From NCBI RefSeq assembly GCF_964213995.1, contig NC_135817.1:70928001-70992000 (forward strand): a stretch of DNA of 64,000 nt. The letters are read 5' to 3'. This DNA comes from Mustelus asterias. Its lineage: Eukaryota. The notes under the pieces are model-generated. The model saw only the letters and a list, made by a program, of their open reading frames with translations. It ran no database searches and was not told the origin of the DNA. This document shows, one piece after another, positions 5,294 to 64,000 of the stretch (its first letter is position 1; the number at the start of each line of letters is the position of its first letter). Position numbers and translations under genes: made by a program.

Positions 5294-5380
5294 TATCCTC
5301 CTGCAGGAGTAGCGGCTCTAGAAAAGCTTAGCTGGGGGAGTGGCTACTTGAGGAGCAAAGGCCTCCAGCCGTTGGAATAT

Positions 5381-6477
5381 GGGGGGGATTCTCCCAGCCT
5401 GCTGTGCTGCTCTAGCAGCGCTGTGGGCTGGGAGACATTATGGAGGCTGTTTAGCAGGCTTCCCACTGTGTGCCACGGCCTCCGGGACCTGGATTTCCTG
5501 AGCCATCAGCTCCACGCCAGAAATCGGTGTGGAGCTGATTTCCATTTTAAAATTCTGATTTCCCTATCATTAGTGGGCTGAGGATTGAAGTCTCCGGGCC
5601 TGCTAGCCTCTCCCACCCCCCACCACCCCCCACCTGGAGTGGTTCACTCCAGCGGGCTTTACAACAGCGTCCCATTAATGGGGAGCTGGCGGCCTGAGCC
5701 TGCTGGAGTGAAGGGGGCCACGGAGGCCCCCCAGGAGGTCAGGGGTAAGGGGGATGCCCTTTGGGCACTGCTCGCCTGGCAGTGCCAGCCTGGCCCCCTG
5801 GCACTGCCCAAGGGGGAAAATGGCAATGCCTGGGGCATCTTGGCACTGTCCACTGGGCATTGGGCAGTGTCAAGGGGGGCAGAGGGGGCAGGGCCTATTG
5901 GAAGTGGGGTTTATTTGGCGGAGATTGGTGGGAGTGGGGGAGGAGGCGGTCCCGCTGCCACTCTGCAGTCGGGATCACGGTCAGAGAGAGGGAAAGGGCT
6001 GATCGGGGCTGGCCATCGAGGCTGGGAGGTCAGGACTGCCGGGGGGGGGGGGGGGGGGGGGGGGGTGGGGTTGGTTGGGGGGGATCAGGCTGTGTGGGGG
6101 TGGGGGAGAACATCGGAAGACGTCCGGGAGGCCAGAAAACTGAGGGTGGGGGGGGTTGGGGTCACACAGCCAGTGTTGAGTGGCTGCAGGGCTGGCCAGC
6201 GATTGGAGGCCAGCAGTGCGGGGCCACTGCGCATGTGCTGATCTGTCATAGCGGAGATTAGCGCACGCACAGTGGCCCCGCTCAGCGCTATGCTGCCGGC
6301 CTCTCCAGTGAGAATAGGCCCTGTCCCCTGGTTTTCAGCGTGAATCTCCCTGAGGCATTCTGCAGTGCACAGAGTGTGGGAGATTCACTTTGAAAATCCT
6401 GCTGAAAAAACCAGCTGGCATTCCTCCAACTTTTACGCAAATTCAACATTTAGAATTTTTTTGGGAGATTCCTGACC
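5381..6477. mobile_element. GC-rich non-autonomous DNA-transposon-like repeat, family unassigned; relatives at about 7530-8020, 19516-19880, 20668-21410, 22655-23565, 55516-56110 and 57010-57165
   Basis: Imperfect TIRs GGGNNGATTCTCCC...GGGAGATTCC. Shared GGCACTGCC/GGCAGTGCC palindromic cores and poly-G tracts; 5730-6470 aligns by eye with 20700-21410. Confidence 0.55.
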
Positions 6478-9902: not shown

Positions 9903-10243
9903 GAATCATAGAGTGGCGATAGAATATAATCACTGCAGTACAGAAAGAGGCCATTCGGCCCATCTGGCATGCACTGACAACAGTCCCACCCAGGCCCTAT
10001 CCCCGTAACCCTCATGTATATACCCTGCTAAACCCCTTTGCACTAAGGGTCAATTTAGCATGGCCAATCAACCTAACCCACGCAACTTTGGATTGTGGGA
10101 GGAAACCGGAGCACCCAGAGGAAACCCACACAGACACGGCGAGAAGGTGCTAACTCCACACAGACAGTAGCCCAAGGCCAGAATTAAACCCAGGCCCCTG
10201 GCGCTGTGAGGCGGCAGTGCTAACCACTGTGCCACCTTGCTGC
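9903..10243 (-). mobile_element. HE1 SINE (CR1/HER1-type tail)
   Basis: Reverse-complement copy of head, core and tail. Confidence 0.88.
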
Positions 10244-10887
10244 CCAGCACAGAAGGAGGTTATTCGGTCTGTGATGTGCATATCAGCGCTCTGCGAGAGC
10301 AATTCACCGAGACCACACCCCTTGGCGTTTCCCATTTCATTTCAGATCATTATCCAATTTTCACTCAAAGGATTTGATTGAATCTGCCTCCACTACACTT
10401 GATTATGCTGGCTGCTTTGCCGAGGCAGCGGGAAGTGTAGACAGAGTCAATGGATAGGAGGCTGGTTTGCGCAATTTATTGTAAATAAATTCAGCCTTTG
10501 GATGAGTTTAAAAGCTATCCTTAACCCACTGCTAGAGCTGAAGGGAGAGAGAAATATGACAAAAAGAAAGGGGAATGAATTTCAACATTCAGGTATAATA
10601 AGCTTATAGGTAATTAATGAAATATTATAGCCCTCAGCCCTGCTTAACAGCCTTAAATGGATGGTACAAGAGAATAGCCTGCTGTATCATTTGTAAGGAT
10701 TTAACCTTTTACTAGTACAGTATCAGATGTGACAGGGATAGTTCTGAAATGGAGCAAGTTTATTGTAAAAGAGACAGGACAAATTGAAGTCCAGGCAGGG
10801 ATTTACTGATCAATGAGAGCTATATACTGCCTGCATCAAGAGTGGACAGAGGAACTCACCACTTCCTTTGCTTTGGTCGCCAGGTCT

Positions 10888-14410: not shown

Positions 14411-15565
14411 GCTCAGTGCTTCTTCTCCGTTTGTCTTCTTTCTTCTGTTTCTTCTCCACCGTATCGGACCCCGGATAGGGGTCTTTTCTCCTGCTGGACC
14501 ATATCCAGCAGACTCCCCTGAGACTGCTAATTAGATAGTTACTGCACAGTCCACTCCACAAGCCTGCAGTTCTTGTCCAATTCTAGGTAAACAAGACTCC
14601 CCTGTGCATGACCGCACTTAATATTCCTCAGTGATAAGATGCAATTTCACCATTTCACATTTCAGACCGGTTTAAAGCACAACAGTTTTTCATGAATCTT
14701 TCGCTTTGCAGATCAACACACAGACAAAATGCATAATTCCTACACATTCCATGGTACTAACACCATAAACCAGCAGTGTAGCATGTCCGGCAGTGAGCCA
14801 TATCTGCCTCTGACTGTTACCATCCTATATGCTGCATCTTCTATGCCTTTGGCCTTGCAGGAGATGGCACAGTGCCACATAGCACTGAATAAAGTGAGCA
14901 AAACCCCTCCACTGTCTATGCCAGGTAGATGTGACAGTGTCTACAGATATGGTTGTGGGCATCTTTCTGGGTTCAGCGAACAAGGCTTTTGCATCAACCT
15001 GATATGACTTCTTTATCCAGAACCAATGAGATGTACAACATATTGTGATTGGAGTGCTTATGAAGAAATTATTGTTTAACATCTAATCTTGGATGAACAA
15101 TAATTTTGTTTGGAAAGACCAAAGACATTTTCAGTTGATTCCTGCCACAGCAAACTCCATACACTAATCCCAATATCCTCCTTCTACCCAGCCACTGTCC
15201 CAAATTAAACTGGTCTGTTCACAACCCTGCCATCTTATTACACTCTGAGATACGTTTCCTACATCTTCCCCAGCGCTAAAATTGTTGACGTCATCTCAAT
15301 AACATTTTCCAACTCCAAATCGATTTCAATTCTCTGACTGATAAAGCGTCATTCTTGCCTTTAACATTTCCAGACATGATTAGTCCAGTAGTTACCTGAC
15401 CAGCTCGTTATATTCCAAATTCCTCAAGCAGCAGCTCCACCAAAACTCAGATTCCTCCGACTGCTCCCCCACTCCTTCCCCCCACACCACCCCCCGCCGA
15501 TCCAAATTAGGCTCACACTGTTCACTGTTGTAAAGTTAAATTTCTAATTTCCCTATCTAAATTCT

Positions 15566-16525
15566 TCCTTGCTGTACGCTATCTCTATAATTCACCTTGC
15601 TGTACCCTATCTCTATAACTAAACTTGCTGTACCCTATCTCTATAACTCACCTTGCTTTACCCTATCTCTGTAACTCACCTTGCTGTACCCTATCTCTAT
15701 AACTCACCTTGCTGTACTCTATCTCTGTAACTCACCTTGCTGTACCCTATCTCTGTAACTCACCTTGCTGTACCCTATCTCTGTAACTCACCTTGCTGTA
15801 CCCTATCTCTATAACTCACCTTGCTGTACTCTATCTCTATAACTGACCTTGCTGTACCCTACCTCTGTAACTCACCTTGCTGTACCCTATCTCTATAACT
15901 CAACTTGCTGTACCCTATCTCTATAACTGACCTTGCTGTACCCTATCTCTATAACTCACCTTGCTTTACCCTATCTTTGTAACTCACCTTGCTGTACCCT
16001 ATCTCTTTAACTCACCTTGCTGCACCCTATCTCTGTAACTCACCTTGCTGTACCCTATCTCGATAACTGACCTTGCTGTACCCTATCTCTCTAACTCACC
16101 TTGCTGTACCCTATCTCTATAACTGACCTTGCTGTACCCTATCTCTATAACTCACCTTGCTTTACCCTATCTCTATAACCCACCTTGCTGAACCCTATCT
16201 CTATAACTGACCTTGCTGTACCCTATCTCTATAACTCACCTTGCTGTACCCTATCTTTGTAACTCACCTTGCTGTACCTTATCTCTATAACTCACCTTGC
16301 TGTACCTTATCTCTATAACTCACCTTGCTGAACCCTATCTCTATAACTCACCTTGCTGTACCCTATCTCTGTAACTCACCTTGCTGTACCCTATCTCTGT
16401 AACTCACCTTGCTGTACCCTATCTCTGTAATGTACCTTGCTGTACCCTATCACTGTAATGTACCTTGCTGTACCTTATCTCTATAACTCACCTTGCTGAA
16501 CCCTATCTCTATTACTCACCTTGCG
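15566..16525 (+). repeat. Minisatellite, 28-bp unit CACCTTGCTGTACCCTATCTCTATAACT, about 34 copies
   Basis: Directly visible tandem array with variant units (TATAA/TGTAA, CTCAC/CTGAC). Confidence 0.97.
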
Positions 16526-17395
16526 GAATCCTATCGCTAGAACTTCCTCCTACTCTACAAGCTCCGACTGATACCTCTGCCCTTTGATGGTTGTGCATCC
16601 ACAGCTATTTCCTTCATCTCACCATTCGAAGCTGAGTTTCAGCCATTCAGGCTCAACGCTCTGGAATTTCCTACCTGAATTCCATCATCTCTTCTTGTGG
16701 TCCAGCTTCTGATTAGGGTCCCTAACCTTTCCTTCTTTGTCTCAGTTGTTAATTAGATGCTGAATGCTTATTGAATGTTGTACAACTTACTTTTTTATGG
16801 ACGCACTTGTTTAGTCAATGATTTTTTTTTCAGAATTCTATTTGGTTTCATTGTTGTTTTCATTTATATTTGAAATGATAGAACATGTAAAAAAATCAAT
16901 TTACAACTTACTTTAATACTCTGAATTGGAAACAATAAGCATTATGCTTATTGCTAACTTTGGTAAATTTGCACTAAAGCCTCGGTCCTATTCTGCTCCA
17001 TTTTATTTCTGAACACACTAGTTTCATTGCTTGGAGTTCTAAAGGTCTAAGGTTGTTTCAAACTTTTGACTTTGGTGTGATTTAGTTAATCTTTAATCCA
17101 ACAACAGGAGAAGTTTATGAGTTTTTATCGGGCTGCTTTTTTCCAGGCCCCATGATGACGGTTGCCTTTCCACCAGCAGAGAAGGTTCTGGTGGGTGGGG
17201 ACCCTAATCAGCTGACAAGGCATGGGGAAAAGCAACCACTTAGGTTTATTACAGACCCAATTAATTCTGTTTTTTGCAAATGAGCTGCTATGTTACTGAT
17301 GGCGGAGCAGCGCCTCTGCCTTACACAGAGGTCCCATCTCCATGGAGACCACTTCCCTATGCCAGGCCAGAGGCTGTTGGAGCCTATGGCCGCAA

Positions 17396-19027: not shown

Positions 19028-19335
19028 TTAAAGTTTATTTATTAGTGTCACAAGTAGGCTTACATTCACACTGCAATGAAGTTACTGTGAAAATCCCCTC
19101 ATCGCCACATTCCGGCGCCTGTTCAGGTACACTGAGGGAGAACTTAGCATGGCCAATGCACCCAACCAGCACGTCTGTCAGACTGTGGGAGGAAACAGAA
19201 GCACCCGGAGCAAACCCACGCAGACACGGGGAGAACGTGCAGATTCCGCACAGACAGTGACCTAAGCCGGGAATCAAATCTGGTTTCCTGGCACTGTGGG
19301 GCAGCAGTGCTAACCACTGTGCCACCATGCTGCCC
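19028..19335 (-). mobile_element. HE1-related SINE, alternative tail
   Basis: As 4560-4875, reversed. Confidence 0.88.
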
Positions 19336-20578: not shown

Positions 20579-21865
20579 TAATAAGAAGTCTCACAACACC
20601 AGGTTAAAGTCCAAAAGGTTTATTTGGTATCGTGAGCTTTTGGAGTGCTGCACCTTCATCAGGTGAGTGGGTACTTTGCACTGGGGGGATGCCCCCAGCG
20701 CTGGGGGGATGCCCCCAGCGCTGGGGGGCTGCCACCTGGGCATTGCCAGCCTGGCAGTGTCAGTCTGGGCTCCCTAGCACCGCCCAAGGGACAAAGTGCC
20801 AAAGTCCAGGGGGCACCTTGGTACTGCCCATCGAGCATGGGGCAGTGCAAGGGGGTGGGGCCTATGCGGGTAGGGCCTATGGGGTGAGGATTGGTGGGGC
20901 GGGGCCTGGGAGGTCACGCTGCCACTCTGCAGACAGGATTGGTGGGGAAAGGAGGGAGGCCAGCGATCGGGGCAGGCTGGGGGGGAGGAGGAGGGGCGGT
21001 CAGGCTGCTGGGGGTTCGGGACTGCCGAATCGGGAGGGGGTGGGGGGGGAGAGGTGCTGGAGATCGGAGCAGGCTGAGTGGGGGGGTTCGAACTGGCCCA
21101 GGAATGGTTGGGGGGGGCCAATGATTGGGCTGTGGGGGGGGGGGGGGTTGAAGGGCCGGCATTGCGGCGGTCTTGCGGCTGGCACTGACAGGGTCAGTGC
21201 ACGCGCAGAGGCGTGTTCAGCGGTATGCTGCCGGCCTCTCAGGCTGGAATAGGCCCCACCCACTGATTATTCGCACAATTCACGCTAGTGCACTCTGCAG
21301 TGCACAGAGTGTGGGAGATTCGTCTCTGAACTCCCACTGAAAGAAACAACATGAATTACTCCAGTTTTCACCGAATTCAACACTTGAATTTATTTGGGGG
21401 AATCCCAGCCGCTGTTGAGGGACACTTTGGTGGAAGTGATGAAAGTTCACTAAGTTTTAGGATAGTTATGGAATATAAGTCCCAAACTGGGGAAAAGCTT
21501 AATTTATAAAGCTGAGACATGACTAGAAACAGTTATCTGAAGATAAGTCAATGCCAGGTCAGTGGGAAGCATTCTCCGTCTGCCCCCTTAAAGAAACAGG
21601 GTAAGACTATCAAATCCAGAGCCCATTAACCATTTTCTCAATTCTAAAAAATAATGTCCTACTTATATATGATTCTACCTAATACTTATATTCTATCTAA
21701 TTATTTGCATATATCCGTCATGGGTCTACACAGATCTGTGGAGAGAGAAGCAGTGTTGATATTTCTATTAACACATTAATGTTGCATAGCAACCTGTTCC
21801 ATCAGCCACTCACCCACAAAATAATGATCCATTCTGTGCTTAGTTGTTGCTGATGATCCTTCAGT

Positions 21866-32085: not shown

Positions 32086-32765
32086 CATAGAATCATAGAA
32101 ACCCTACAGTGCAGAAGGAGGCCATTCGGCCCATCGAGTCTGCACCGACCACAATCCCACCCAGGCCCTACCCCCACATATTTTACCTGCTAATCCCCCT
32201 AACCTACGCATTTTAGGATTCTAAGGGGCAATTTTTAACCTGGCCAATCAACCTAACCCACACATCTTTGGACTGTGGGAGGAAACCGGAGCACCCGGAG
32301 GAAACCCACGCAGACACGAGGAGAATGTGCAAACTCCACACAGACAGTGACCCGAGCCGGGAATCGAACCCGGGACCCTGGAGCTGTGAAGCTGCAGTGC
32401 TAACCACTGTGCTACCGTGCCGCCCCGAGTGTGGGCAGTTTTGAGTGAGGCCATCCAGAAACTGTTAAAGTTTATTAATTAGTGCCACAAGTAGGCTTAC
32501 ATTAATGCTGCAATGAAGTTACTGTGAAAATCCCCTAGTCGCCACAATCCGGTGCCTGTTCAGGTACACTGAGGGAGCATTTAGCATGGCCAATTCACCT
32601 AACCAGCACGTCTTTCAGGCTGCAGGATGAAACCGGAGCACCCGGAGGAAACCCACGCAGAAACGGGGAGAAAGTGCAGACTCCACACAGACAGTGACCC
32701 AAGCCAGGAATTGAACCCGGGTCCCTGGAACTGTGAGGCAGCAGTGCTAACCGCTGTACCACTGT
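32086..32765 (-). mobile_element. Two adjacent SINEs: HE1 (32086-32425) and alternative-tail form (32465-32765)
   Basis: Same head and core, different 3' tails. Confidence 0.9.
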
Positions 32766-34417: not shown

Positions 34418-34722
34418 AAGTTAAAGTTTATTTATTAGTCACAAGTAGGCTTACATTAACACTGCAGTGAAGTTACTGTGAAAATCCCCTCATCGCCACA
34501 CTCGGGCGCCTGTTCAAGTACACTGAGGGAGAATTTAGCATGGCCAATGCACCTAACCTGCACATCTTTGGACTGTGGGAGGAAACTGGAGCACCCGGAG
34601 GAGATCCACACAGACACGGGGAGAATGTGCAAACTCCAAATAGACAGTGACCCAAGCCAGGAATTGAACCCGGGTCCCTGGCACTGTGAGGCAGCAGTGC
34701 TACTGTGCCACCGTGCCACCCC
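34418..34722 (-). mobile_element. HE1-related SINE, alternative tail
   Basis: Core plus tail, reversed. Confidence 0.88.
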
Positions 34723-35374
34723 ACAAGGCAAGTGACACATGGCTTGACCAAAAGGATAGATTTTAAGGAAGGCCTTAAAGAACACGTGGGAGATCACTAA
34801 GCAGAAGGGTCCAGGAAGGCAATTCCAGAATCTGGGGGCTGATGAAATGATGTGGAATGAAGGCATGCATGAGAGCTCAGTGTGAAAGGAAGGAGAGAAT
34901 TTCAAAGGGTTATTGTAGGGTTGGAAGATTTTACCGAGATAGGTGGTGCAAGGCCATGGAGAGATTTCAAGGTGAGAATTTTAAATTGAAGGGTCTGTCT
35001 GGGAAACATATAACTCAGTAAGGACAGACTGCTAGCTGAGTTTACCTTGGTATGTAATAGGACAGGGGTTGCCAAACCTTTTGAGCCGCAGAAACCCTAG
35101 TGACCTCCCAAGAGCTTCGGGCAACCCCAAGCATTCTCATCATGTCAAATTTGGATAATCTTTTAGACAACTGCTATATTATGCCACCTTCGTGATTTCC
35201 AAACAGTTTCAAACATGGACTACCTGTTCATTTAATTGCGAAGTGAGAATAAGGCCTGAAACAAAAAGTTGGGAGCTAGAGGTATTTCCATCATCCTCCC
35301 CTTCTTCCAGCTAATAAATAATATTTTGGATACAAGTTGCCTGATCCCTTTTTGTGAGCAGTCACTTCCACTGA

Positions 35375-48733: not shown

Positions 48734-48904
48734 CTACAGACTGAGGTTTACTGTATTTGACTGTAGTTTGCTACTACTCAGACTGTGAATCATTGCTATC
48801 ATCTGAGAGTGCTTGTTGAGTTCATCCTGTTGGGCTTGGACAAGGGCTTCTTTTTGTTGCAATCGTGCTTCTACCTGGGATTTTTGCACTTCTAGAGATG
48901 ACAA
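48734..48904 (-). CDS. CIP2A: CIP2A last coding exon
   Basis: ctgcAG|[56 protein letters not shown] matches the human C-terminus ...[29 protein letters not shown]. Confidence 0.96.
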
Positions 48905-49851
48905 CTGCAGAATGGGACAAAATGAACATCTATATTAGGCAAGAGTGTAGAACAACAAATTTATTAATGTAAAACAAAACTAATTTCTAAATATCTGTTC
49001 CTGAATCTAAATAATTTTCTTATTCAGGAAATAAACAAAAATAATACATAATGCCAAAAAAATGGCAGCACGGAGCTCTGAAATGCAGAGAGATCTGGAT
49101 ATGTTAGTGCATGAATCCTAAAAGGTTAGTATGCAGGTACAGCAAGTCATGAGGAAAGTTAACAGAATGTTACTATTTATCACGAGGGGAATTGAATACA
49201 AAAGTAGAGAGCGAGTCATTGGTAATACAAAACTGGAGTACTGTTGAAAGAAAACATTTTGTCAAAGCTTTTTATCTTGCACTGGTCAGGACCAACAGAA
49301 GAATATTAATATCAAGGGAAACATTATATTGTATGGAACAGGCTCGAGGGCTCTGTAGTCTACACCTGCTCCTAATCTGTATACTTGTTTCCGCATTAGA
49401 CACAGCAACATCAAGTGCAAATTGCATTAGTCTTCTGAAGCAATTTTCTTTTACACAATTTTCAGTTCAAATTAATTTGTCATCAAACATAGGATCTGTC
49501 ATGAACCATCACAACCAGATGGAATGTCTGAACCTTTGTTTGTATTAAATACATCAAGGAATATTTTAAGTGGTAACCTGATGCAAGTTTACAAATGCAA
49601 CTGAAAATGGGTTACCCACAAAAATAATTTTTAATCAGTGTCTAGACCAACAGCTGAGAGTATTCTACTGAACCCCATTCATTTGTTTCATTGGTAGACA
49701 ATGGATTGTTTCCTTCTTTAATATTTGAAAATTATTAGTGGCTTTGGTCCTAAAAATGGAACTTCAATTTTTAGAGCCAATTTGAATAACTAGCTGAAAT
49801 GTACAACGATGATCAATTTTATCTACTTGCATCCTGGTCAGGCGACCTTTG

Positions 49852-51314: not shown

Positions 51315-51599
51315 TGTTCTAATTAGCGACTTTAGATTCCCAATTAAATTTGTGTTACAAAATATTCAGAACATCCTGGATAGTCTCAGATTATAGTCAG
51401 AGACACTGGTTTCTAATGCAATTGTACCTGCAACCCTTGTAATGAGAAATTTACTTTCACTCCTGAAAATTTAGTTATTTCTAGTATAATGCAGGGAAGA
51501 GGACACAGCAACTCAATCTGGATATTGTAATCTTCACATGTGCTTCAACAATCTTCTGAAAGGCAGAAAGATTAACAAGTCTAAATACATAAAAGTTAC

Positions 51600-51739
51600 C
51601 TTAATACTGAGGTCTTTCCTGGCTAACTCTGTCTTGCTAAGCTCCTTTCGGAGAACGTCAATAGCTTCTTCCATATCCTCTTTCTCCTTCTCTGTTGTTT
51701 TTATTTTTTCTTGCTGTGCTCGGAAATTTTGTTCCAAAC
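51600..51739 (-). CDS. CIP2A: CIP2A penultimate exon (140 bp)
   Basis: LEQNFRAQQEKIKTTEKEKEDMEEAIDVLRKELSKTELARKDLSIK; phase 1/0. Confidence 0.93.
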
Positions 51740-54179
51740 CTGTCAAATTGTTACAAAAAAAATAAGTTAGTGGGTTAAGACTAACATGCAGAGTGCAGAT
51801 TTATCAGCACTATTACAATCACATATGCTCTGTCGTATTGATGCCTTTCCGCCACTTTCCTGCTATCTACTGACAACATAACTTTTTAAACTTTCACAAG
51901 GTATATATAACCTATTGCTTGAGATTTTTCAGCCCATCAGTATATCAAACTGATGAAATGACTAAAACATGTTACAATCCCAGTTAATGTTGATACTGGA
52001 TGGGAAGGTCTCAGAATGGAACCCTGGCTCAAAAGGCCACTTACAGGACTGCCAATTAGCTTTTAACAAAAAAATCAAAACATTCATTAAACATGAAAAG
52101 TTCGACCAGTACAATACTCCTTTACTTATTTTCAGAAATGTATTCAGGTTTTTATGGATAATACAAGTTACAAAACATATCTTATGCTATATAATCTCAG
52201 TAAGTACATAGCCCCTGTAAAGTAATAGGCCAAATGCGGTTAGATACACTGTACTCTGAAACCAAGTGGCAGATGCTACACAATAGAACTTCTGTGGATT
52301 CCTCCTCAAATCCCCTCGGATGATTACTACACCATGAGCCAAGTGGCCTCACTGGATTCCACACAAAGTGTTTCCCAAACTCCACTCTCTAAAAGACATA
52401 ACTGAGAATCTTCTTTTAAACAATGCTTTCCTCAGCTGTTTTCAGCAAGGATCCACTTCCAACATTTCCTACTCTCCTTTCAGTATTCTTCTGCCTTGAA
52501 CTGCCATTGTATTCAAGCTTCTACACAATCTCTCAGGTATCCAGCCACCGATAGAACACTACTGCTTCATAGGCTGTCGCCAAACTTTTGATTTACCTCT
52601 GATATCTGGTTCCTCACTTTAATCTAGTTCTTGCAGCTGTCTCTAACTCAGAACATTTTCTTTGCCTTTTACTTGAATTACTTGAATTCCAACAAACAGT
52701 ACTTGTTCAAATTCCAGTTCCTTTTGCTCCTTTGCTGTCCACCTTCCTGGTACCTCTCTTTTCATTGCCTGGTTTCTAGAACGATCTGTTCTTTAATTTC
52801 TGGGACTTGCTTTCTTGCCCATATACTCAATTGTCTGACACAGCTGTGTGAGAACTGTTCCCTCTCTAGCTGCTAAACCCCAATTGCCTTGGGTCCAGTT
52901 AAAACTGAACACAAAAGGTCTTTCTAACTTAAAGATGATCCCTGGTTGCTGTTTAGTCATTCTCTACCTTTGTTCGCTTTTTACATTATAATCTAAGCAA
53001 AATGCAGATTGTTTGAAATGAAACCGAACCTCCATACATGCAAACACCTTTGTTTAACTTGAATCTAACTAGAGTTTCAACCCTTTCTTACACAAACATT
53101 AAACTCACTGAAATCTATACTTTTTTCTAATATCCAAAAATATAAACATTGATCACTTAAAACTATCCCTGCTTTCTAACAAATTGCAATTTTTCATTTA
53201 AACTGTAGAATTCACATCAGAAGTGCTGTAGTTCTCTTTTTTTTTGAAGCTGTGTCCTCTTGTAGGACTGCTCCCTAATTCAGTCCCCAATATTAATCAA
53301 GCCCCAGCCCAGTCTATTCCCTAGGCGATTTTGCATCTGAAAGCAGCTTGAGTAACCAGAATAACTTAGCTAGCATTAAATTACGCAACTTCAGTATACG
53401 TATAGCTGATCAAATTTACACAACATGCCAGTCTGCTACATTGGGTAGACTGGCAGGAGCTCATGAATCTCAAAGATGGGAGAACAGTTGCAAAGATAGA
53501 ACCTGAAAGGAATCTTCCTGCATTCAGGTCCTCAAAAGCATTTTGATAAAAAGAAAATACTATTGAGATGTTAGAAGATGGAGGAACATGTGCACTGTGA
53601 TTCATGTACAAACCGCATGCCTGATACCTGTAAGTGACTACAATTCATACAGTAACCGTAATTTTAATTCAAATGATGAATTGAATTATTTCCCTGACGT
53701 GTGCCTCCAATTACAGAAATGCATGAAATGCAATGAACTTCTAAGATTGTGTTAGCGCTCGACATGAACAAAGGACCAATGTAGAACAGCGTAAGGGGCC
53801 TCTGACTTTGGGTAGATTGTCCTACATCTGCTTGTGGCACAGCTGTGAGAACTGTTTCCTGTTGGGCCATCTACCTAAAGTTTTGAAGCAAGGTAAAAAG
53901 CACAATCCTAACATAAATTAAATGCTCTTAAGATAGGGGAAGATTTATTATAAAGTTTTCCTATTGCTCCATCTTCTTTTAAGTTCCCAATAGGATCACA
54001 CACAAATTTCCAATGACGGTTTTTCCCGATGACTTGAACCATTTGGAACACATAAGACCATACAAATGTAATATAATACATCCCATCACTCCGTGGCACA
54101 TTTCACTTTTCTGTTCAAATAATAAATACATTTTGAAGCAGACAAATGGACGTAGGTGAGTGAAAAACCAAAGACGCAC

Positions 54180-54262
54180 CCATTAATTTATTGTCCTTTT
54201 CCTCTAACTGAATGCATAGATCCTTTTTCTGTGCTTCCATCTCTGCTAACTGAGCAAGGCAT
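54180..54262 (-). CDS. CIP2A: CIP2A exon (83 bp)
   Basis: CLAQLAEMEAQKKDLCIQLEEKDNKLM; cttAG / G|gtgcgt; phase 2/1 fits both neighbours. Confidence 0.87.
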
Positions 54263-54400
54263 CTAAGATTCAAAAAGAAAAACAAAATTTTACCGATTCC
54301 TTAAAAGAATTTACACTTGACAAACATGACTTCAAGTCATTCTGATAGACTTAGGAACTATAAATACTACATCCGATCACAGGTTGGAAAATGGACTTAC

Positions 54401-54514: not shown

Positions 54515-55004
54515 CTAAAAAGAAAGTTTGTGTAAATGAACAAATCTGAAATTGAATTTATGGATTATATTTTCAAGAAAGTTATTCTGTCAAAAATACA
54601 ATTCATTTAACCTTTTAAAAAGTTACACAAATATAAATATACTCCTGTAGGTTGCTACATCAAGGTTCATTCAGCCCACTCCCATGATGGTACATTCTCT
54701 CCTCTGCTACAATGCCCTCAGTGCCACAAGTTATTTTTCCTAATGTCCTCCCCCATGTATCCATTGTCACTTTGAAATAGGGTGCTGAACGAAGGATGCC
54801 AGTGGTTTATTGGAAGATCCTCCCCCATTCTTGTAGACAAGCGTTGGGCCTCCAAACGATAGCACAAAACTGGTAAGATTATTGCTCCATGCCATACACA
54901 CAGTCATTTCTTTACAATGAACCATGATGGCACTGTAATTCATTTTTTGAAATGACAGGATGGAAAATTGCACCAAAATCGGAGCGGATATCACTCAAAC
55001 TTAC

Positions 55005-55201
55005 TTTTGAGCAAGACTCTTTGAAGTAACTTTTAAGGATTCATGTTCTTCAGAAACGGCCTGTAGTTTACAATTGTGCTGATAAAGCTCTTCAATATCA
55101 GCCTTGGCACGGTCAGATTCCAACAGTTGTGTCTTTAGCGCTCCATCAAGTTCCTCATTTTTTCTCTCTGCTTCCATTAAAAGTGAAGCTAACTGTCGTG
55201 C
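55005..55201 (-). CDS. CIP2A: CIP2A exon (197 bp), coiled coil
   Basis: [65 protein letters not shown]; AG/GTAAGT; phase 0/2. Confidence 0.93.
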
Positions 55202-56114
55202 CTACAACTCAAAAAATATCCAAATTTATAAAATGGAACAATTCAGAATGAATGTACAAAGTAGAGATTGAAGCTGCCTTAACATACAAATTAGAAAAAA
55301 AAGTGAAAATTCAATGTTCAAGACATTAAATATTACCCAGGGAATACACACCTGATCTGTATAAATCATCAGACATCACTAGTGCATAAGGGCAGTGACA
55401 AGTGATATCAGACAAGCAATCATACTGCTGTAGCAGGCTTGGTGTCTATGATGGTAGTGAAAAAGTAGAGTTCACCATCAATACATGTGAAAGTTGGTGC
55501 CATGTTTGGAGATCATGGGGGCGATTCTCCCATTCCAACCCGCTAATTTTTTGGTGCGTTGGGTTGGGAGACGCGCGTGCGCGCCAATTCGCATATGCGT
55601 TCCTGATTGCATGCACGTCCCCCACCGCCAGAAAGTAGGCGCAGTCAGGACCACGCAGGAAACCAGCAGGAAGACCAGGTAAGTGATTTTAATCCTTTTG
55701 TAATGTAATTGATATGTCATTATCGGGCCCAGGACTGAATTCTCCAGGCCTGATAGCATCTCCCACTCTGCCAGTACAATTTCACTCCGGTGGGGTTTAG
55801 AGTAGCTCCCCACTTTCAGGGAACTAGCAGGAGACCCCCCCTGGGATAAAGAGGGGGGGGGGCGGTTGGGGAGAGAGAGAAAGAAAGATCAGGGCCCCCC
55901 AGGAGTTGGGCTGCGGGCGTGGTCCCTCCTGGGCATGGGCATCTTGGCAGTGCTAGCCTGTGCCCCCTGGCACTGCCCAAGGGGCAAAGTGCCCATGCCT
56001 GGATGGCACCTTGGCACTGCTCACCAGGCATCGGGCAGTGCCAAGGGGGTGGGGCCTATTGTAGGCAGGATTTAGGGGTGATCGGTGGGGGAGGGTCACA
56101 CTGCCACACGGCAT

Positions 56115-56366
56115 TCTATGCTTTCAAAAAAAAATTGTTCCATCCCAAAAAATCAAATTCACATAGAATCCAATTTATGGTTCCCACCAGAGACACAAAC
56201 AAAATCCAAGCTGACAAGATGAGGCATTGCACCCCACCTTGGGCTTGATCTGATGTTTCATCTTAGCCAAAAGACCGAAATGTCTTCGAAAAATTGCATT
56301 AGCAATGTCTCGGTTAAACCTATCGATTACCCTGATCAGTGGCGCTATCCACTGCCAGGTAAGCAT
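56115..56366 (-). mobile_element. snRNA-chimeric element (U1-like + U4-like + U2-like head, then stem-loop), SINEU-like
   Basis: ATGCTTACCTGGCAGTGG...TGATCA resembles the U1 5' end. AGGTTTAACCGAG..ATTGCTAAT..GCAATTTTT resembles U4. TCGGTCTTTTGGCTAAGAT resembles the U2 5' end. Hairpin at 56241-56215. Confidence 0.65.
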
Positions 56367-57211
56367 TTTCCTTCACATAAAAGTTACAAACCCTAATATC
56401 ATCAATGATTCCAATTGAAATTGGCTCAACCCAAAACTCTATACCAATTGATCAATTAAAATCCCAGTAAAGCGGTAAGGTTAATTAAAAGGAAGAACAG
56501 TAAATAACAGTTAATGCCTGAAATCCTTCTCCTGATGCAAATTTCAAAATGAGCAAAATGAAAAGGATTTACTGTGGTTTCTAACGTGCTTCCCAGACAA
56601 ACGGAATGGATAACTCAGAAGCTGTGCAATTTTCAACGTTTTTTATAAACCCCATTAAATTTTGTTCAATTACAAAAATATTAACCATAATTGATTACTG
56701 CCCTTCATTTCCAAAGATTAAAAGAACTGCAGCTTCTGCAAAATAGATTTGCATTCTACTGGCACTTCACTTTTGATAACTTTTTAATGTTACTTATAAT
56801 CGACATTAGTGTGGTAAATCCAACAGTGCCTTACTCTGCTAGATTTTGAAGATCCTCACAATTAGAAACTTAGAACCTAGGGAGTTAGTCTATACCAGGC
56901 AATGTTGGGTCAATTTCTGTGCTGAAAAAATTCTAATTTGAATTCAATTATATAATGTACCCAATCAAAAGATTAATTGAATTGAAAGACTGAATCAAAG
57001 AGAGACAATGGGTGAGATTCTCTGGCTCCTGCTCTGTTTTTCTCAGCCATGCCCCATTCGCTGGCGGTGGGATCTTCTGGTCTAGCTGTCAATGGGAATT
57101 CCCACTGAAGCCACACGGTGGAACCAGAGAATCTCGCTGGTGTGAACAGCCAGAGAATTCCAGCCAGTATCTTTAAAATTACTTATCTGTCTTGCAATAT
57201 ATTCAAAATAC

Positions 57212-57322
57212 CTCTGCTTCTGCATGGGCTCTCTGACAGCGGTACTGGGCAATCAAACGATCAGCCTGTGCCAGGGCTAGTGCCTTTGCTTCCAATAGGT
57301 CCTGCAAACGGTTTTCTTTGGA
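57212..57322 (-). CDS. CIP2A: CIP2A exon (111 bp)
   Basis: [37 protein letters not shown]; AG/GT; phase 0/0. Confidence 0.95.
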
Positions 57323-57539
57323 CTAAACAAAAGAAAGAGTTAAACTTCAATTATATTCATGCTAAAGATTGTTAATATCAAAACACGTTTCAAAACGTCA
57401 ATCTGTGATATTGTAAAATATGGAAATCAAATGAAGTAAGGATGTTTAAGGCCCTGCTCAGTTCACATGCTATTGTATCAGAAGGGAGGCATGCAAAGGT
57501 ATAAATGAAGGACAGCCATCTCTAGATGAATCAGTCTGG

Positions 57540-58080
57540 TGAAACTATCCTGCATACCTTCTCTTGGCAAATGCATCCATTCTTAGGTAAGACCACCAAA
57601 CTGCGCACACCACTCCAGGTGTGGTCTCACCAAAGACCTGTACAGCTGAGGTAAGATTGAAATCCTCTTGCAAGCAAAACCAACATTTGTTCATACTTGC
57701 TTTCAATGATCGGTGTACAAGGACAACCAGGTGCTTCTATGCATCAACATTTCCCAAACTATCACAATTTAAATAATATTCTGTTTTCCATTTTTCTGAC
57801 AGAAGTGGATGACTTCACACTTATCCACATTATACAACACTTGCCATGTATTTGGCCACTCACTCAAAGTGTAAATCACCTTGAAGCTTCTTTACTTCTT
57901 CCTCATCACTCAAAACACCCCCTAGTTTTTTAGTCATCAGCTTGAAAATATTACTATGATTCCCTCAACCAAACTGTTGATGTATATTGTGAATAGCTAG
58001 GGCCTAAGCACTGATCCCTGTGGTGCCCCACTAATCACCGCCTTCCACTCCAAAAAACAGTCATTTATTCTGACCCTTTG
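57540..58080 (-). mobile_element. Degraded CR1 RT fragment
   Basis: PQGSVLGP-like ccacagggatcagtgcttaggcc on the - strand. Confidence 0.6.
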
Positions 58081-63545: not shown

Positions 63546-63684
63546 AGATGAATCACTGGTCCAATAGCATTTTTAGTATCTTCTGAAAAAGTGTCAATAT
63601 CTGCCAGAAGACAGTGCGATATTATAAGCAAACAATAATATATAAACATATAACCCATAATGCCTATTAACATGCAGTACAAAC

Positions 63685-63865
63685 CTCCGTTCCTAATTGT
63701 AATTTATCAATCAACTCATGAATATTGGATCTGGCAGCACTGGTTGTACTTGAACATTTTGATGTTACAAAACTTGCTGATTGCTGGTGGACAGGATTTT
63801 TTTTCATTACATGGTCAGTGCTCTGTTGTTTATATGCATTATTGGCAGCAATGTTTTCCCCAAGC
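63685..63865 (-). CDS. CIP2A: CIP2A (KIAA1524) internal exon, the most 5' one in the window
   Basis: ttcAG|G CTT...GAG|gtttgt. LGENIAANNAYKQQ...NIHELIDKLQLGTE matches human LGESIAANNAYRQQ...NIEELIEKLQSGMV. Confidence 0.9.
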
Positions 63866-64000
63866 CTGAAAGGAACAAAACAGCACAAGTGTAAAATTTG
63901 TCCTCGACCATTTCTATATTCAGGGCAACATATCACAGAATCACAGATTTGTTATGACACAGAAGGAGCCTATTTGATCCATCTTATCTGCACCAGCTCT

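What the first reader, a model, noticed from the sequence alone, without database searches (positions are those of the whole stretch)
56115..56366. Tri-snRNA chimera (U1-U4-U2) inside a CIP2A intron: a possible shark SINEU family or spliceosome-mimic RNA
Seen on -: 56366-56333 ATGCTTACCTGGCAGTGGATAGCGCCACTGATCA versus U1 ATACTTACCTGGCAGGGGAGATACCATGATCA. 56321-56309 AGGTTTAACCGAG versus U4 AGGTTTATCCGAG (12/13). Then ATTGCTAAT (U4 stem-I segment) and GCAATTTTT (resembling the U4 Sm site). 56278-56260 TCGGTCTTTTGGCTAAGAT versus U2 TCGGCCTTTTGGCTAAGAT (18/19). A 12-bp G.U-rich hairpin follows (56241-56215), closed by CAAGC/GCTTG. Established: SINEs with U1- or U2-derived heads (SINEU) were described in crocodilians; I know of no U4-containing or shark example, but cannot search. 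Inference: the retained pieces include the base-pairing arms of each snRNA (U1 5'-splice-site arm, U4 and U2 U6-binding arms). This suggests a retroposed family built by serial snRNA capture that might interact with splicing factors.
Basis: partly seen in the sequence, partly recalled or inferred. Interest (0 to 1): 0.85.

Follow-up and report, generated by a model that had tools for sequence, protein, structure and literature searches.

The report
Shark U2-headed retroposon with U1/U4 extension
This is a decayed copy of an abundant shark mobile element whose head was copied from U2 spliceosomal RNA, and this copy also picked up scraps of U4 and U1 RNA at its front end; it looks like a molecular fossil, not a working RNA.

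Summary
On the minus strand, 56366-56254 carries collinear pieces of U1 (nt 1-32), U4 (four blocks) and U2 (nt 1-27). Each motif is unique in the window, with chance expectations of 0.00-0.07. They agree with published snRNA sequences. Rfam calls none of them: the best scores are U1 9.7-10.7 bits, U2 6.6 bits and no U4 row.

Contigs of four organisms split the element in two. From U2 nt 1 (about 56286) downstream, summed depth is hundreds- to thousands-fold above the single-copy flanks. In run X16, 204 contigs leave the window at 56273 and continue with a U2 5'-end-like consensus. The U1/U4 part is low copy, with one to a few extra contigs.

My reading is a SINEU-like, U2-headed retroposon copy with a 5' extension added by reverse-transcriptase template switching. 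It is old, being present at the same place in all four organisms. It decays neutrally and shows no sign of function.

This scan's first-stage notes on the same genome mention U2-headed "SINEU-like" elements 22 times and one U1-U2 chimera. All are unchecked, and none mentions U4. I found no shark SINEU in print.

The parts
56333..56366 (-). U1 snRNA nt 1-32-like piece. It is the 5' end of the whole element and is low copy.
   Evidence: 12/13 to the Rfam U1 5' consensus, unique in the window. Rfam 3'-cut U1 hit of 9.7 bits, E 0.45, model 1-39. By eye 27/32 to the published U1. In X1, depth is 25.4 at 56344 and 56360 against 12.5 for single copy.
56287..56332 (-). U4 snRNA-like piece with internal deletions. 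The blocks resemble U4 nt 18-26, 33-45 and 54-62, plus the Sm-site block 116-126. It is low copy.
   Evidence: Searches give unique motif hits, with 0.02 expected and 0 of 100 shuffles. The by-eye comparison uses the U4 printed in PMC13253345. There is no Rfam U4 row. A second X1 contig has an extra letter behind 56321 that restores the U4 reading.
56254..56286 (-). U2 snRNA nt 1-33-like head. The highly repeated family begins here.
   Evidence: Rfam 3'-cut U2 alignment to model positions 1-33, 6.6 bits, E 9.2. 18/19 motif match. In X16, 204 contigs leave the window at 56273 and continue with a consensus that fits U2 consensus positions 1-13 at 10/13 by my count.
56196..56249 (-). 54-nt hairpin module of the repeated body. 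It is tandemly doubled in some other copies.
   Evidence: Fold at -22.6 kcal/mol, z -3.8. The joint '56249 goes back to 56196' is seen in contigs of all 4 runs. The bin 56154-56264 has summed depth 99,843 in X1 against 12.5 for single copy.
56114..56195 (-). 3' body: a second hairpin, a stretch that resembles the U2 Sm-site region by eye only, and a run of nine T. No poly(A). The 3' limit is uncertain.
   Evidence: Sequence and fold (z -0.9). The Rfam scan of 56112-56186 gave no U2 row. The neighbouring repeat's homology stops at about 56113.
55506..56113 (+). Unrelated G+C-rich palindrome-rich repeat that abuts the element's 3' end. It is not part of the element.
   Evidence: Copies lie at 5372-5938 and 20720-20904. 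Both of those copies continue past the point where this one stops.

Best explanation
The stretch is a dead, old copy of a short non-autonomous retroposon. Its head is the first ~30 nt of U2 snRNA, which makes it SINEU-like. The family is abundant in this shark and in three related organisms.

In this copy, or in a very small subfamily, the reverse transcriptase did not stop at the 5' end of the retroposon RNA (U2 nt 1). It switched templates to a U4 snRNA near its Sm site and copied it patchily towards its 5' end. It then switched again into U1 snRNA at about nt 32 and ran to U1 nt 1. The result reads U1-U4-U2-body from 5' to 3'.

Shown: the snRNA pieces and their order; the high copy number of the U2-headed part and its shared 5' boundary; the low copy number of the U1/U4 part; presence at the same place in four organisms.

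Inferred: the template-switch mechanism, the LINE partner, and the lack of function.
For: - The motif hits are unique in the window and clustered on one strand. They agree with published U1/U2/U4 sequences.
- In X1, summed depth is 12.5 in the flanks 56376-56930, 99,843 in bin 56154-56264 and 5,196 in bin 56265-56375. Point depths are 91.6, 46.6 and 25.4 at 56303, 56321 and 56344. The other three runs show the same shape.
- In X16, 204 contigs end their fit at 56273 and continue with a U2 5'-end-like consensus, then with unlike letters (agreement 0.4).
- The downstream module starts at its own nt 1 at the U4/U2 junction, and the whole element starts at U1 nt 1. This is what a run-off followed by a template jump predicts.
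- Precedents: recurrent 5' addition of U1/U2 pieces, and 26 SINEU-2 copies with U1 5' extensions (PMC4494074); double template switches giving tripartite chimeras such as B2-U6-L1 (PMC2104539, section 8); U4 retropseudogenes in human (PMC4476161, table passage).
- Neutral decay: contigs of X3, X9 and X16 carry the same flank with 4-6% differences. At 56344 three organisms keep the U1 letter while the window has lost it. At 56360 two organisms have lost the U1 letter.
Against: - I found no convincing target-site duplication. The only candidate is an 8/8 match, TATGTGAA, upstream of 56366 and inside the element at 56165-56172, which is within chance.
- There is no poly(A) tail at the apparent 3' end, whereas all crocodilian SINEU have one.
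- No other full copy could be fetched, so family structure, tail and partner LINE are unknown.
- A few other contigs do cover the U4-like part: in X1 about 34 depth units beyond the locus contig at 56321, in X16 about 34. The extension is therefore not strictly unique, and a one-off event is not proven.
- Depth from contigs is not a copy number, as the tool itself warns.
- Rfam gives no significant score for any piece.
Confidence: 0.68

Rival explanations
1. The U1-U4-U2 composite is itself a small amplifying subfamily. A master copy arose by serial capture and then retroposed a few times, as with the SINEU-1 subfamilies.
For: Extra contigs cover the U4-like part in X1 (46.6 against 12.5 at 56321, one contig of depth 23.3 with its own indels) and in X16 (44.5 against 10.6). 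One extra X1 contig covers the U1-like part, and its fit ends before 56380. An unchecked first-stage note reports a U1-U2 chimeric retroposon elsewhere in this genome.
Against: The numbers are tiny beside the U2-headed family. In X3 and X9 almost no extra depth is seen at 56321-56344. The extra contigs could be segmental duplicates or genuine snRNA genes or pseudogenes. The junctions could not be compared.
Confidence: 0.2
2. A U2-headed retroposon landed inside or next to an older U1-U4 chimeric or U4 retropseudogene. This could be by chance, or because its Tx1/Keno-type partner prefers snRNA-like targets. On this reading the U1/U4 part is flank, not element.
For: Tx1-clade LINEs include lineages that target U2 and U5 snRNA genes, and SINEU share their partners' target preference (PMC4494074). 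A few other copies share the U4-like 5' flank.
Against: No remainder of U4 (its 3' stem-loop) follows the element's 3' end at about 56113. An unrelated G+C-rich repeat lies there instead. The U4 piece ends near its own 3' region exactly where U2 nt 1 begins, which fits a template jump better.
Confidence: 0.08
3. A transcribed, functional snRNA-like or 'spliceosome-mimic' RNA that uses the retained U1, U4 and U2 pairing arms.
For: The 252 nt fold well (z -4.1).
Against: Rfam scores are 6-11 bits against gathering scores of 46-69.5. The U1 arm is partly paired in a local 11-bp stem. The letter at 56360 within the arm differs in two of four organisms. Among the differences that one search lists (373 more are not shown), the U1-like part is not clearly better conserved than the flanks: 1-2 of 62 letters against 4-6%. 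By recall, there is no snRNA-type upstream promoter. No listed holder is on record as RNA, though that does not show silence.
Confidence: 0.02
4. Chance resemblance. This would include the fact that the reverse complement of the U1 5' end is simply a consensus 5' splice site on the plus strand.
For: No Rfam hit is significant. The plus strand reads CAG|GTAAGC at 56356-56364, and a 47-codon frame is open at 56253-56396(+).
Against: Four independent motifs from three snRNAs lie within 107 nt on one strand, with expectations of 0.07, 0.02, 0.00 (0 of 100 shuffles) and 0.03 per window. The U2 head is shared by a large repeat family. The plus-strand GT is GG in two of four organisms. By recall, the host gene runs on the minus strand.
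Confidence: 0.01

Closest known systems
SINEU (SINEU-1, -2, -3) of crocodilians (Kojima 2015, PMC4494074; introduction, results and discussion read)
   Same: A short retroposon whose head is a U2 (or U1) snRNA 5' fragment. Further snRNA pieces are added recurrently at the 5' end, and individual copies carry U1 5' extensions. It is a multi-copy interspersed family. By eye, the body shows a possible second U2-derived piece, reminiscent of SINEU-3, which is an internally deleted U2.
   Different: The host is a shark, whereas the paper found none outside crocodilians. A U4-derived piece is present, whereas only U1 and U2 were reported. This copy shows no poly(A) tail and no clear TSD. The body carries a 54-nt hairpin module that is doubled in some copies. 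The partner LINE and any target preference are unknown.
LINE-mediated chimeric retropseudogenes formed by template switching, including tripartite ones (Gogvadze et al. 2007, PMC2104539, abstract and section 8 read; Doucet et al. 2015, PMC4476161, passages)
   Same: Several RNAs are fused head to tail. Small nuclear RNA sits at the 5' side, and the most 5' module is complete at its own 5' end. Two successive switches are implied.
   Different: Those chimeras end in a LINE, SINE or mRNA 3' part with poly(A) and perfect 14-16 bp direct repeats, neither of which is seen here. Here two of the three captured RNAs are Sm-class snRNAs other than U6.
Genuine U1, U2 and U4 snRNA genes (Rfam RF00003, RF00004, RF00015)
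   Same: Short identical stretches: the U1 5' arm, part of the U4 5' stem-loop, the stem-I segment and the Sm site, and U2 stem-loop I.
   Different: Only 27-45 nt of each are present. Scores are 6-11 bits or none, against gathering scores of 46-69.5. Most structural domains are missing.

Membership tests
SINEU (snRNA-headed SINE, Kojima 2015) | 5' head derived from U1 or U2 snRNA | tested here: met
   U2 nt 1-33 aligned by Rfam at 56286-56254. 18/19 motif match. U1 5' end at 12/13. Published sequences compared by eye.
SINEU (snRNA-headed SINE, Kojima 2015) | Interspersed multi-copy family with a common 5' boundary | tested here: met
   This holds for the U2-headed part only. Summed contig depth is about 3,000-11,000 times the single-copy depth in four runs. 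In X16, 204 contigs leave the window at 56273. It does not hold for the U1/U4 part, which has 1 to a few extra contigs.
SINEU (snRNA-headed SINE, Kojima 2015) | 3' poly(A) tail | tested here: not met
   There is no A-run at the minus-strand 3' side. A run of nine T lies at 56126-56134, followed by 12 nt and then the neighbouring repeat. The 3' end of this copy may be truncated. An unchecked note describes a poly(A)-tailed U2-headed copy elsewhere in the genome.
SINEU (snRNA-headed SINE, Kojima 2015) | Target-site duplications, and mobilisation by a Tx1-clade LINE with shared target preference | not testable with these tools
   There is only one copy in the window and no access to the rest of the genome. 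The only TSD candidate is an 8-nt match, which is within chance.
Template-switch chimeric retropseudogene | The downstream module is complete at its 5' end at each junction, and the most 5' module starts at nt 1 | tested here: met
   U2 model position 1 sits directly after the U4-like Sm block. The element begins with U1 position 1. The U4 piece is not complete at its 5' end. That is allowed in the double-switch model.
Template-switch chimeric retropseudogene | Flanking direct repeats and a poly(A) at the 3' end | tested here: not met
   Neither was found around 56366 or 56114.
Functional spliceosomal snRNA gene (U1, U2 or U4) | Reaches the Rfam gathering score with full secondary structure | tested here: not met
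   There are 0 matches at gathering threshold in the whole window. U1 scores 9.7-10.7 bits against 69.5, and U2 6.6 against 46. U4 has no row.

The most novel reading that the evidence does not exclude
Sharks carry a large, undescribed SINEU-type family. Within it sits a small lineage that captured three different spliceosomal snRNAs in series (U2, then U4, then U1). That would be the first snRNA-headed SINE outside crocodilians and the first with a U4-derived module. It would imply that the partner LINE's reverse transcriptase habitually works amid snRNPs.
Probability: 0.25. Interest if true: 0.55.

Novelty: new variant of a known kind. Interest (0 to 1): 0.4.

Why it matters
snRNA-headed SINEs have been described only in crocodilians (PMC4494074), and the reviews I checked still cite them as crocodilian only. 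A high-copy U2-headed family in a cartilaginous fish would show that this route to making SINEs arose, or persisted, far more widely. How such elements are transcribed is an open question, because U1 and U2 have no internal promoter, and a shark family would offer a second system for studying it. The U4 and U1 additions record which RNAs the reverse transcriptase meets. For genome annotation, such copies should be masked as repeats and not called as snRNA genes or pseudogenes.

Tried and rejected
1. I tried to fetch other copies through spurious ORFs. The 63-aa minus-strand ORF across the element gave no candidate in the search for homologous proteins, so I dropped that route.

2. A metagenome scan with a 19-letter stretch of the head gave 5 loci. 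Three (two of them identical) read like microbial coding sequence by eye, one is a contig-end fragment, and one, L002, is a plant-like contig. About that many hits are expected by chance by my own rough estimate. None is a shark copy.

3. A self-BLAST found no second copy of 56100-56400 in the window.

4. Rfam scans cut so that pieces sit at stretch ends gave only sub-threshold U1 and U2 rows. U4 got none, and the 3' body got no U2 row.

5. I considered that 56253-56358 is a plus-strand exon ending in a perfect 5' splice site. I rejected this because the GT is GG in two of four organisms and the likely host gene runs on the other strand.

6. The CIP2A identity could not be confirmed. PDB, Pfam and Atlas named nothing. 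The label is from recall of the human protein against the frames listed.

7. I did not run a scripted alignment or a shuffle test against full-length U1/U2/U4, because those sequences come from papers and not from the window or a stored locus. The block coordinates are by eye.

8. Supplements are closed. The supplementary figures S1-S6 of PMC4494074 (subfamily alignments, target sites) were not seen and might show further parallels. Repbase and Dfam could not be searched, so a catalogued shark SINEU cannot be excluded.

Full report
THE OBSERVATION

I tested each claimed snRNA piece in two ways.

First I tested motif uniqueness in the 64-kb window against dinucleotide shuffles.
- The U1 5'-end 13-mer (from the Rfam consensus) matches 12/13 at 56354-56366(-). 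It is the only hit at <=1 mismatch, with 0.07 expected.
- The U4 13-mer matches 12/13 at 56309-56321(-). It is the only hit, with 0.02 expected.
- Two U4 9-mers lie back to back at 56289-56306(-). This is the only hit, and 0 of 100 shuffles had one.
- The U2 19-mer matches 18/19 at 56260-56278(-). It is the only hit at <=3 mismatches, with 0.03 expected.

All four hits lie within 107 nt on one strand, so chance is not a serious explanation.

Second I compared by eye with snRNA sequences printed in two papers. U1, U2 and U4 are in bioRxiv 10.1101/2021.08.01.454689, section 60. U4 is also in PMC13253345, section 19.
- 56366-56333 corresponds to U1 nt 1-32, at 27/32 with two 1-nt insertions.
- 56330-56320 corresponds to U4 nt 18-26, at 9/9 with two 1-nt insertions.
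- 56321-56309 corresponds to U4 nt 33-45, at 12/13.
- 56306-56298 corresponds to U4 nt 54-62, at 9/9.
- 56297-56286 corresponds to U4 nt 116-126, at 11/11 with one insertion.
- 56286-56260 corresponds to U2 nt 1-27, at 20/27, with nt 9-27 at 18/19.

These block coordinates are by eye. I did not script an alignment because the reference sequences come from papers.

Rfam does not call any piece.
- There are 0 matches at gathering score in the window.
- In E-value mode U1 scores 10.7 bits, E 3.9 or 1.
- Cut at its 3' side, U1 scores 9.7 bits, E 0.45, model 1-39.
- U2 scores 6.6 bits, E 9.2, model 1-33.
- No U4 row appears in 56195-56375 or 56280-56345.

That is what one expects of 27-45-nt fragments scored against full-length structured models. 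It also shows that none of them is an snRNA gene.

It has an 11-bp G.U-rich stem with an outer closing helix; 56196-56252 folds at -22.6 kcal/mol, z -3.8. The whole 252 nt fold with z -4.1.

WHAT THE READS SAY

No listed run that holds the stretch is on record as RNA. Twenty of the 21 listed runs hold at least part of it. I laid Logan contigs of four runs (X1, X3, X9, X16; coded organisms A, B, C, F) on 54600-57900 at >=80% likeness.

In X1 the flanks 54711-55154 and 56376-56930 have summed depth of about 12.5-12.7, from one contig with 0-1 differences. X1 may be the source sample.

Between 55488 and 56375 the depth rises sharply. The X1 figures are 99,843 in bin 56154-56264 and 5,196 in bin 56265-56375. 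The other three runs show the same shape: 49,859 and 2,312 in X3, 16,186 and 904 in X9, and 34,403 and 1,384 in X16. The tool warns that this is not a copy number. I take it only as hundreds- to thousands-fold repetition.

Point depths from the difference tables show where the repetition ends. In X1 they are 91.6 at 56303, 46.6 at 56321, and 25.4 at 56344 and 56360, falling to 12.5 at 56380. In X16 they are 54.1, 44.5 and 10.6 at the first three places.

In X16, 204 contigs stop fitting at 56273. Their continuing consensus, read on the minus strand, fits positions 1-13 of the Rfam U2 consensus at 10/13 by my count. It then becomes heterogeneous, with overall agreement 0.4.

So the highly repeated element starts at U2 nt 1, at about 56286. 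The window copy is simply more diverged there. The U4- and U1-like stretch upstream is a low-copy addition.

Other copies also carry a tandem doubling of 56196-56249. A 'goes back 54' joint is seen in 1-3 contigs in each of the four runs.

AGE AND CONSTRAINT

Contigs of X3, X9 and X16 cover 56305-57100 with 32/797, 12/308 and 54/856 differing letters. The same insertion therefore sits at the same place in all four organisms.

Two differences are listed within the U1-like part. At 56344 the other three organisms, and a second X1 contig, carry the letter that U1 has, so the window has the derived state. At 56360, inside the 5' splice-site-pairing arm, organisms C and F carry a non-U1 letter.

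A second X1 contig of depth 23.3 has one extra letter behind 56321. That letter restores the U4 reading 'ATGAGG'.

These details fit neutral decay from genuine U1 and U4 sequence. They speak against selection on the pairing arms, although the printed difference list is truncated (373 rows are not shown).

SURROUNDINGS

No second copy of 56100-56400 exists in the window.

The element's 3' side abuts a G+C-rich, palindrome-rich repeat at 55506 to about 56113. Its two other copies in the window (5372-5938 and 20720-20904) continue past the point where this one stops. That fixes the element's 3' limit near 56114, or shows a truncation there.

The 3' body holds a second hairpin and a run of nine T (56126-56134). 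By eye only, it also holds stretches resembling the U2 Sm-site region, but Rfam gave no U2 row there. There is no poly(A) and no convincing TSD.

Minus-strand open frames at 63670-63951, 55004-55201, 54118-54300, 51537-51800 and 48737-48934 look like C-terminal CIP2A exons to my recollection of the human protein. On that reading the element lies in an intron, in the sense orientation. PDB, Pfam and Atlas searches named nothing, so the gene label is recalled and not tested.

MECHANISM

The best-supported reading is a U2-headed, SINEU-like retroposon copy with a 5' extension made by two template switches of the mobilising reverse transcriptase. After copying the retroposon RNA to its 5' end (U2 nt 1), the enzyme jumped to U4 near its Sm site and copied it with internal skips. 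It then jumped into U1 at about nt 32 and ran off at U1 nt 1.

Two features fit this. The downstream module is complete at its own nt 1 at the U4/U2 junction. The element begins with U1 nt 1.

There are three precedents.
- Kojima 2015 (PMC4494074; introduction, results and discussion read) describes recurrent 5' addition of U1 or U2 pieces in SINEU-1. It reports 26 SINEU-2 copies with U1 5' extensions attributed to template jump, and SINEU-3 as an internally deleted U2.
- Gogvadze et al. 2007 (PMC2104539; abstract and section 8) document tripartite chimeras, including B2-U6-L1, formed by double template switches.
- Doucet et al. 2015 (PMC4476161; passages) list U4 among the human snRNAs that form processed pseudogenes.

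The rivals are a true small tri-snRNA subfamily, insertion into an older U1-U4 pseudogene, a functional snRNA-like RNA, and chance. They are weighed in their own sections.

KNOWN OR NEW

Kojima 2015 states that no SINEU was detected outside crocodilians. Two later papers I checked by passage still cite them as crocodilian, or only in general terms (PMC5381603; PMC7245038).

My literature searches found no shark SINEU and no U4-containing SINE.
- 'SINEU' gave 411 papers, and 29 of the 30 listed concern other words beginning with those letters, nearly all SINEUP.
- 'SINEU' plus 'shark' as whole words gave 1 irrelevant paper.
- 'SINEU', 'snRNA' and 'SINE' gave 6 papers, none on sharks.
- 'shark', 'SINE', 'snRNA' and 'transposable elements' gave 34 papers. 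I viewed the listing of 20 and read passages in two.

Repbase, Dfam and Repbase Reports are outside the library, so a catalogued entry cannot be excluded.

First-stage notes of this scan on the same genome mention SINEU-like U2-headed elements 22 times, including doubled-head and hairpin-rich forms, and one U1-U2 chimera. None mentions U4. All are unchecked. My independently supports the existence of the U2-headed family and of the doubled hairpin module.

VERDICT

This is a member, with an unusual U4+U1 5' extension, of a shark U2-headed retroposon family that resembles crocodilian SINEU. The tri-snRNA unit is rare or unique and shows no sign of function.

I class it as a new variant of a known kind, with interest 0.4.

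Noticed in passing
window 55506-56113 (+); copies at 5372-5938 and 20720-20904: A G+C-rich repeat built of GGCACTGCC-type palindromes. It has the highest summed contig depth of the stretch laid (272,646 in X1, bin 55932-56042, against 12.5 for single copy). This copy stops exactly where the snRNA-headed element ends, while the other two copies run on.
   Followed up: partly
L002:1965-2016 (JGI metagenome contig Ga0123342_1007279): A 31% G+C contig that encodes a 643-aa lectin-domain receptor kinase, which is plant-like by recall. It shares 25/26 plus 12/12 letters with the U2-like head region of the element. I took this as coincidence or an unrelated plant U2 derivative.
   Followed up: partly
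window 56331-56359 (-): The U1-like piece folds on itself in an 11-bp stem (56359-56349 with 56342-56331). Several of its differences from U1 strengthen this stem, which buries part of the 5' splice-site-pairing arm.
   Followed up: partly
window 56356-56364 (+): The reverse complement of the U1-like 5' end is a perfect 5' splice-site consensus (CAG|GTAAGC), preceded by an open 47-codon frame. The GT is GG in two of the four organisms laid, so it is unlikely to be a conserved exon.
   Followed up: partly
window 48737-48934, 51537-51800, 54118-54300, 55004-55201, 63670-63951 (-): Open frames that look like C-terminal coiled-coil exons of CIP2A, by recall of the human protein. No tool confirmed the name.
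   Followed up: partly
window 15427-16538: A tandem array with a 28-nt period and more than 30 units at about 90% identity.
   Followed up: no
window 10040-10245, 19129-19335, 32220-32425, 34520-34725 and others: Many copies, on both strands, of a ~200-300-nt interspersed repeat that ends in a tRNA-like stretch (GGTTAGCACTGC... on one strand). By recall, this is the ordinary tRNA-headed SINE background of this genome.
   Followed up: no
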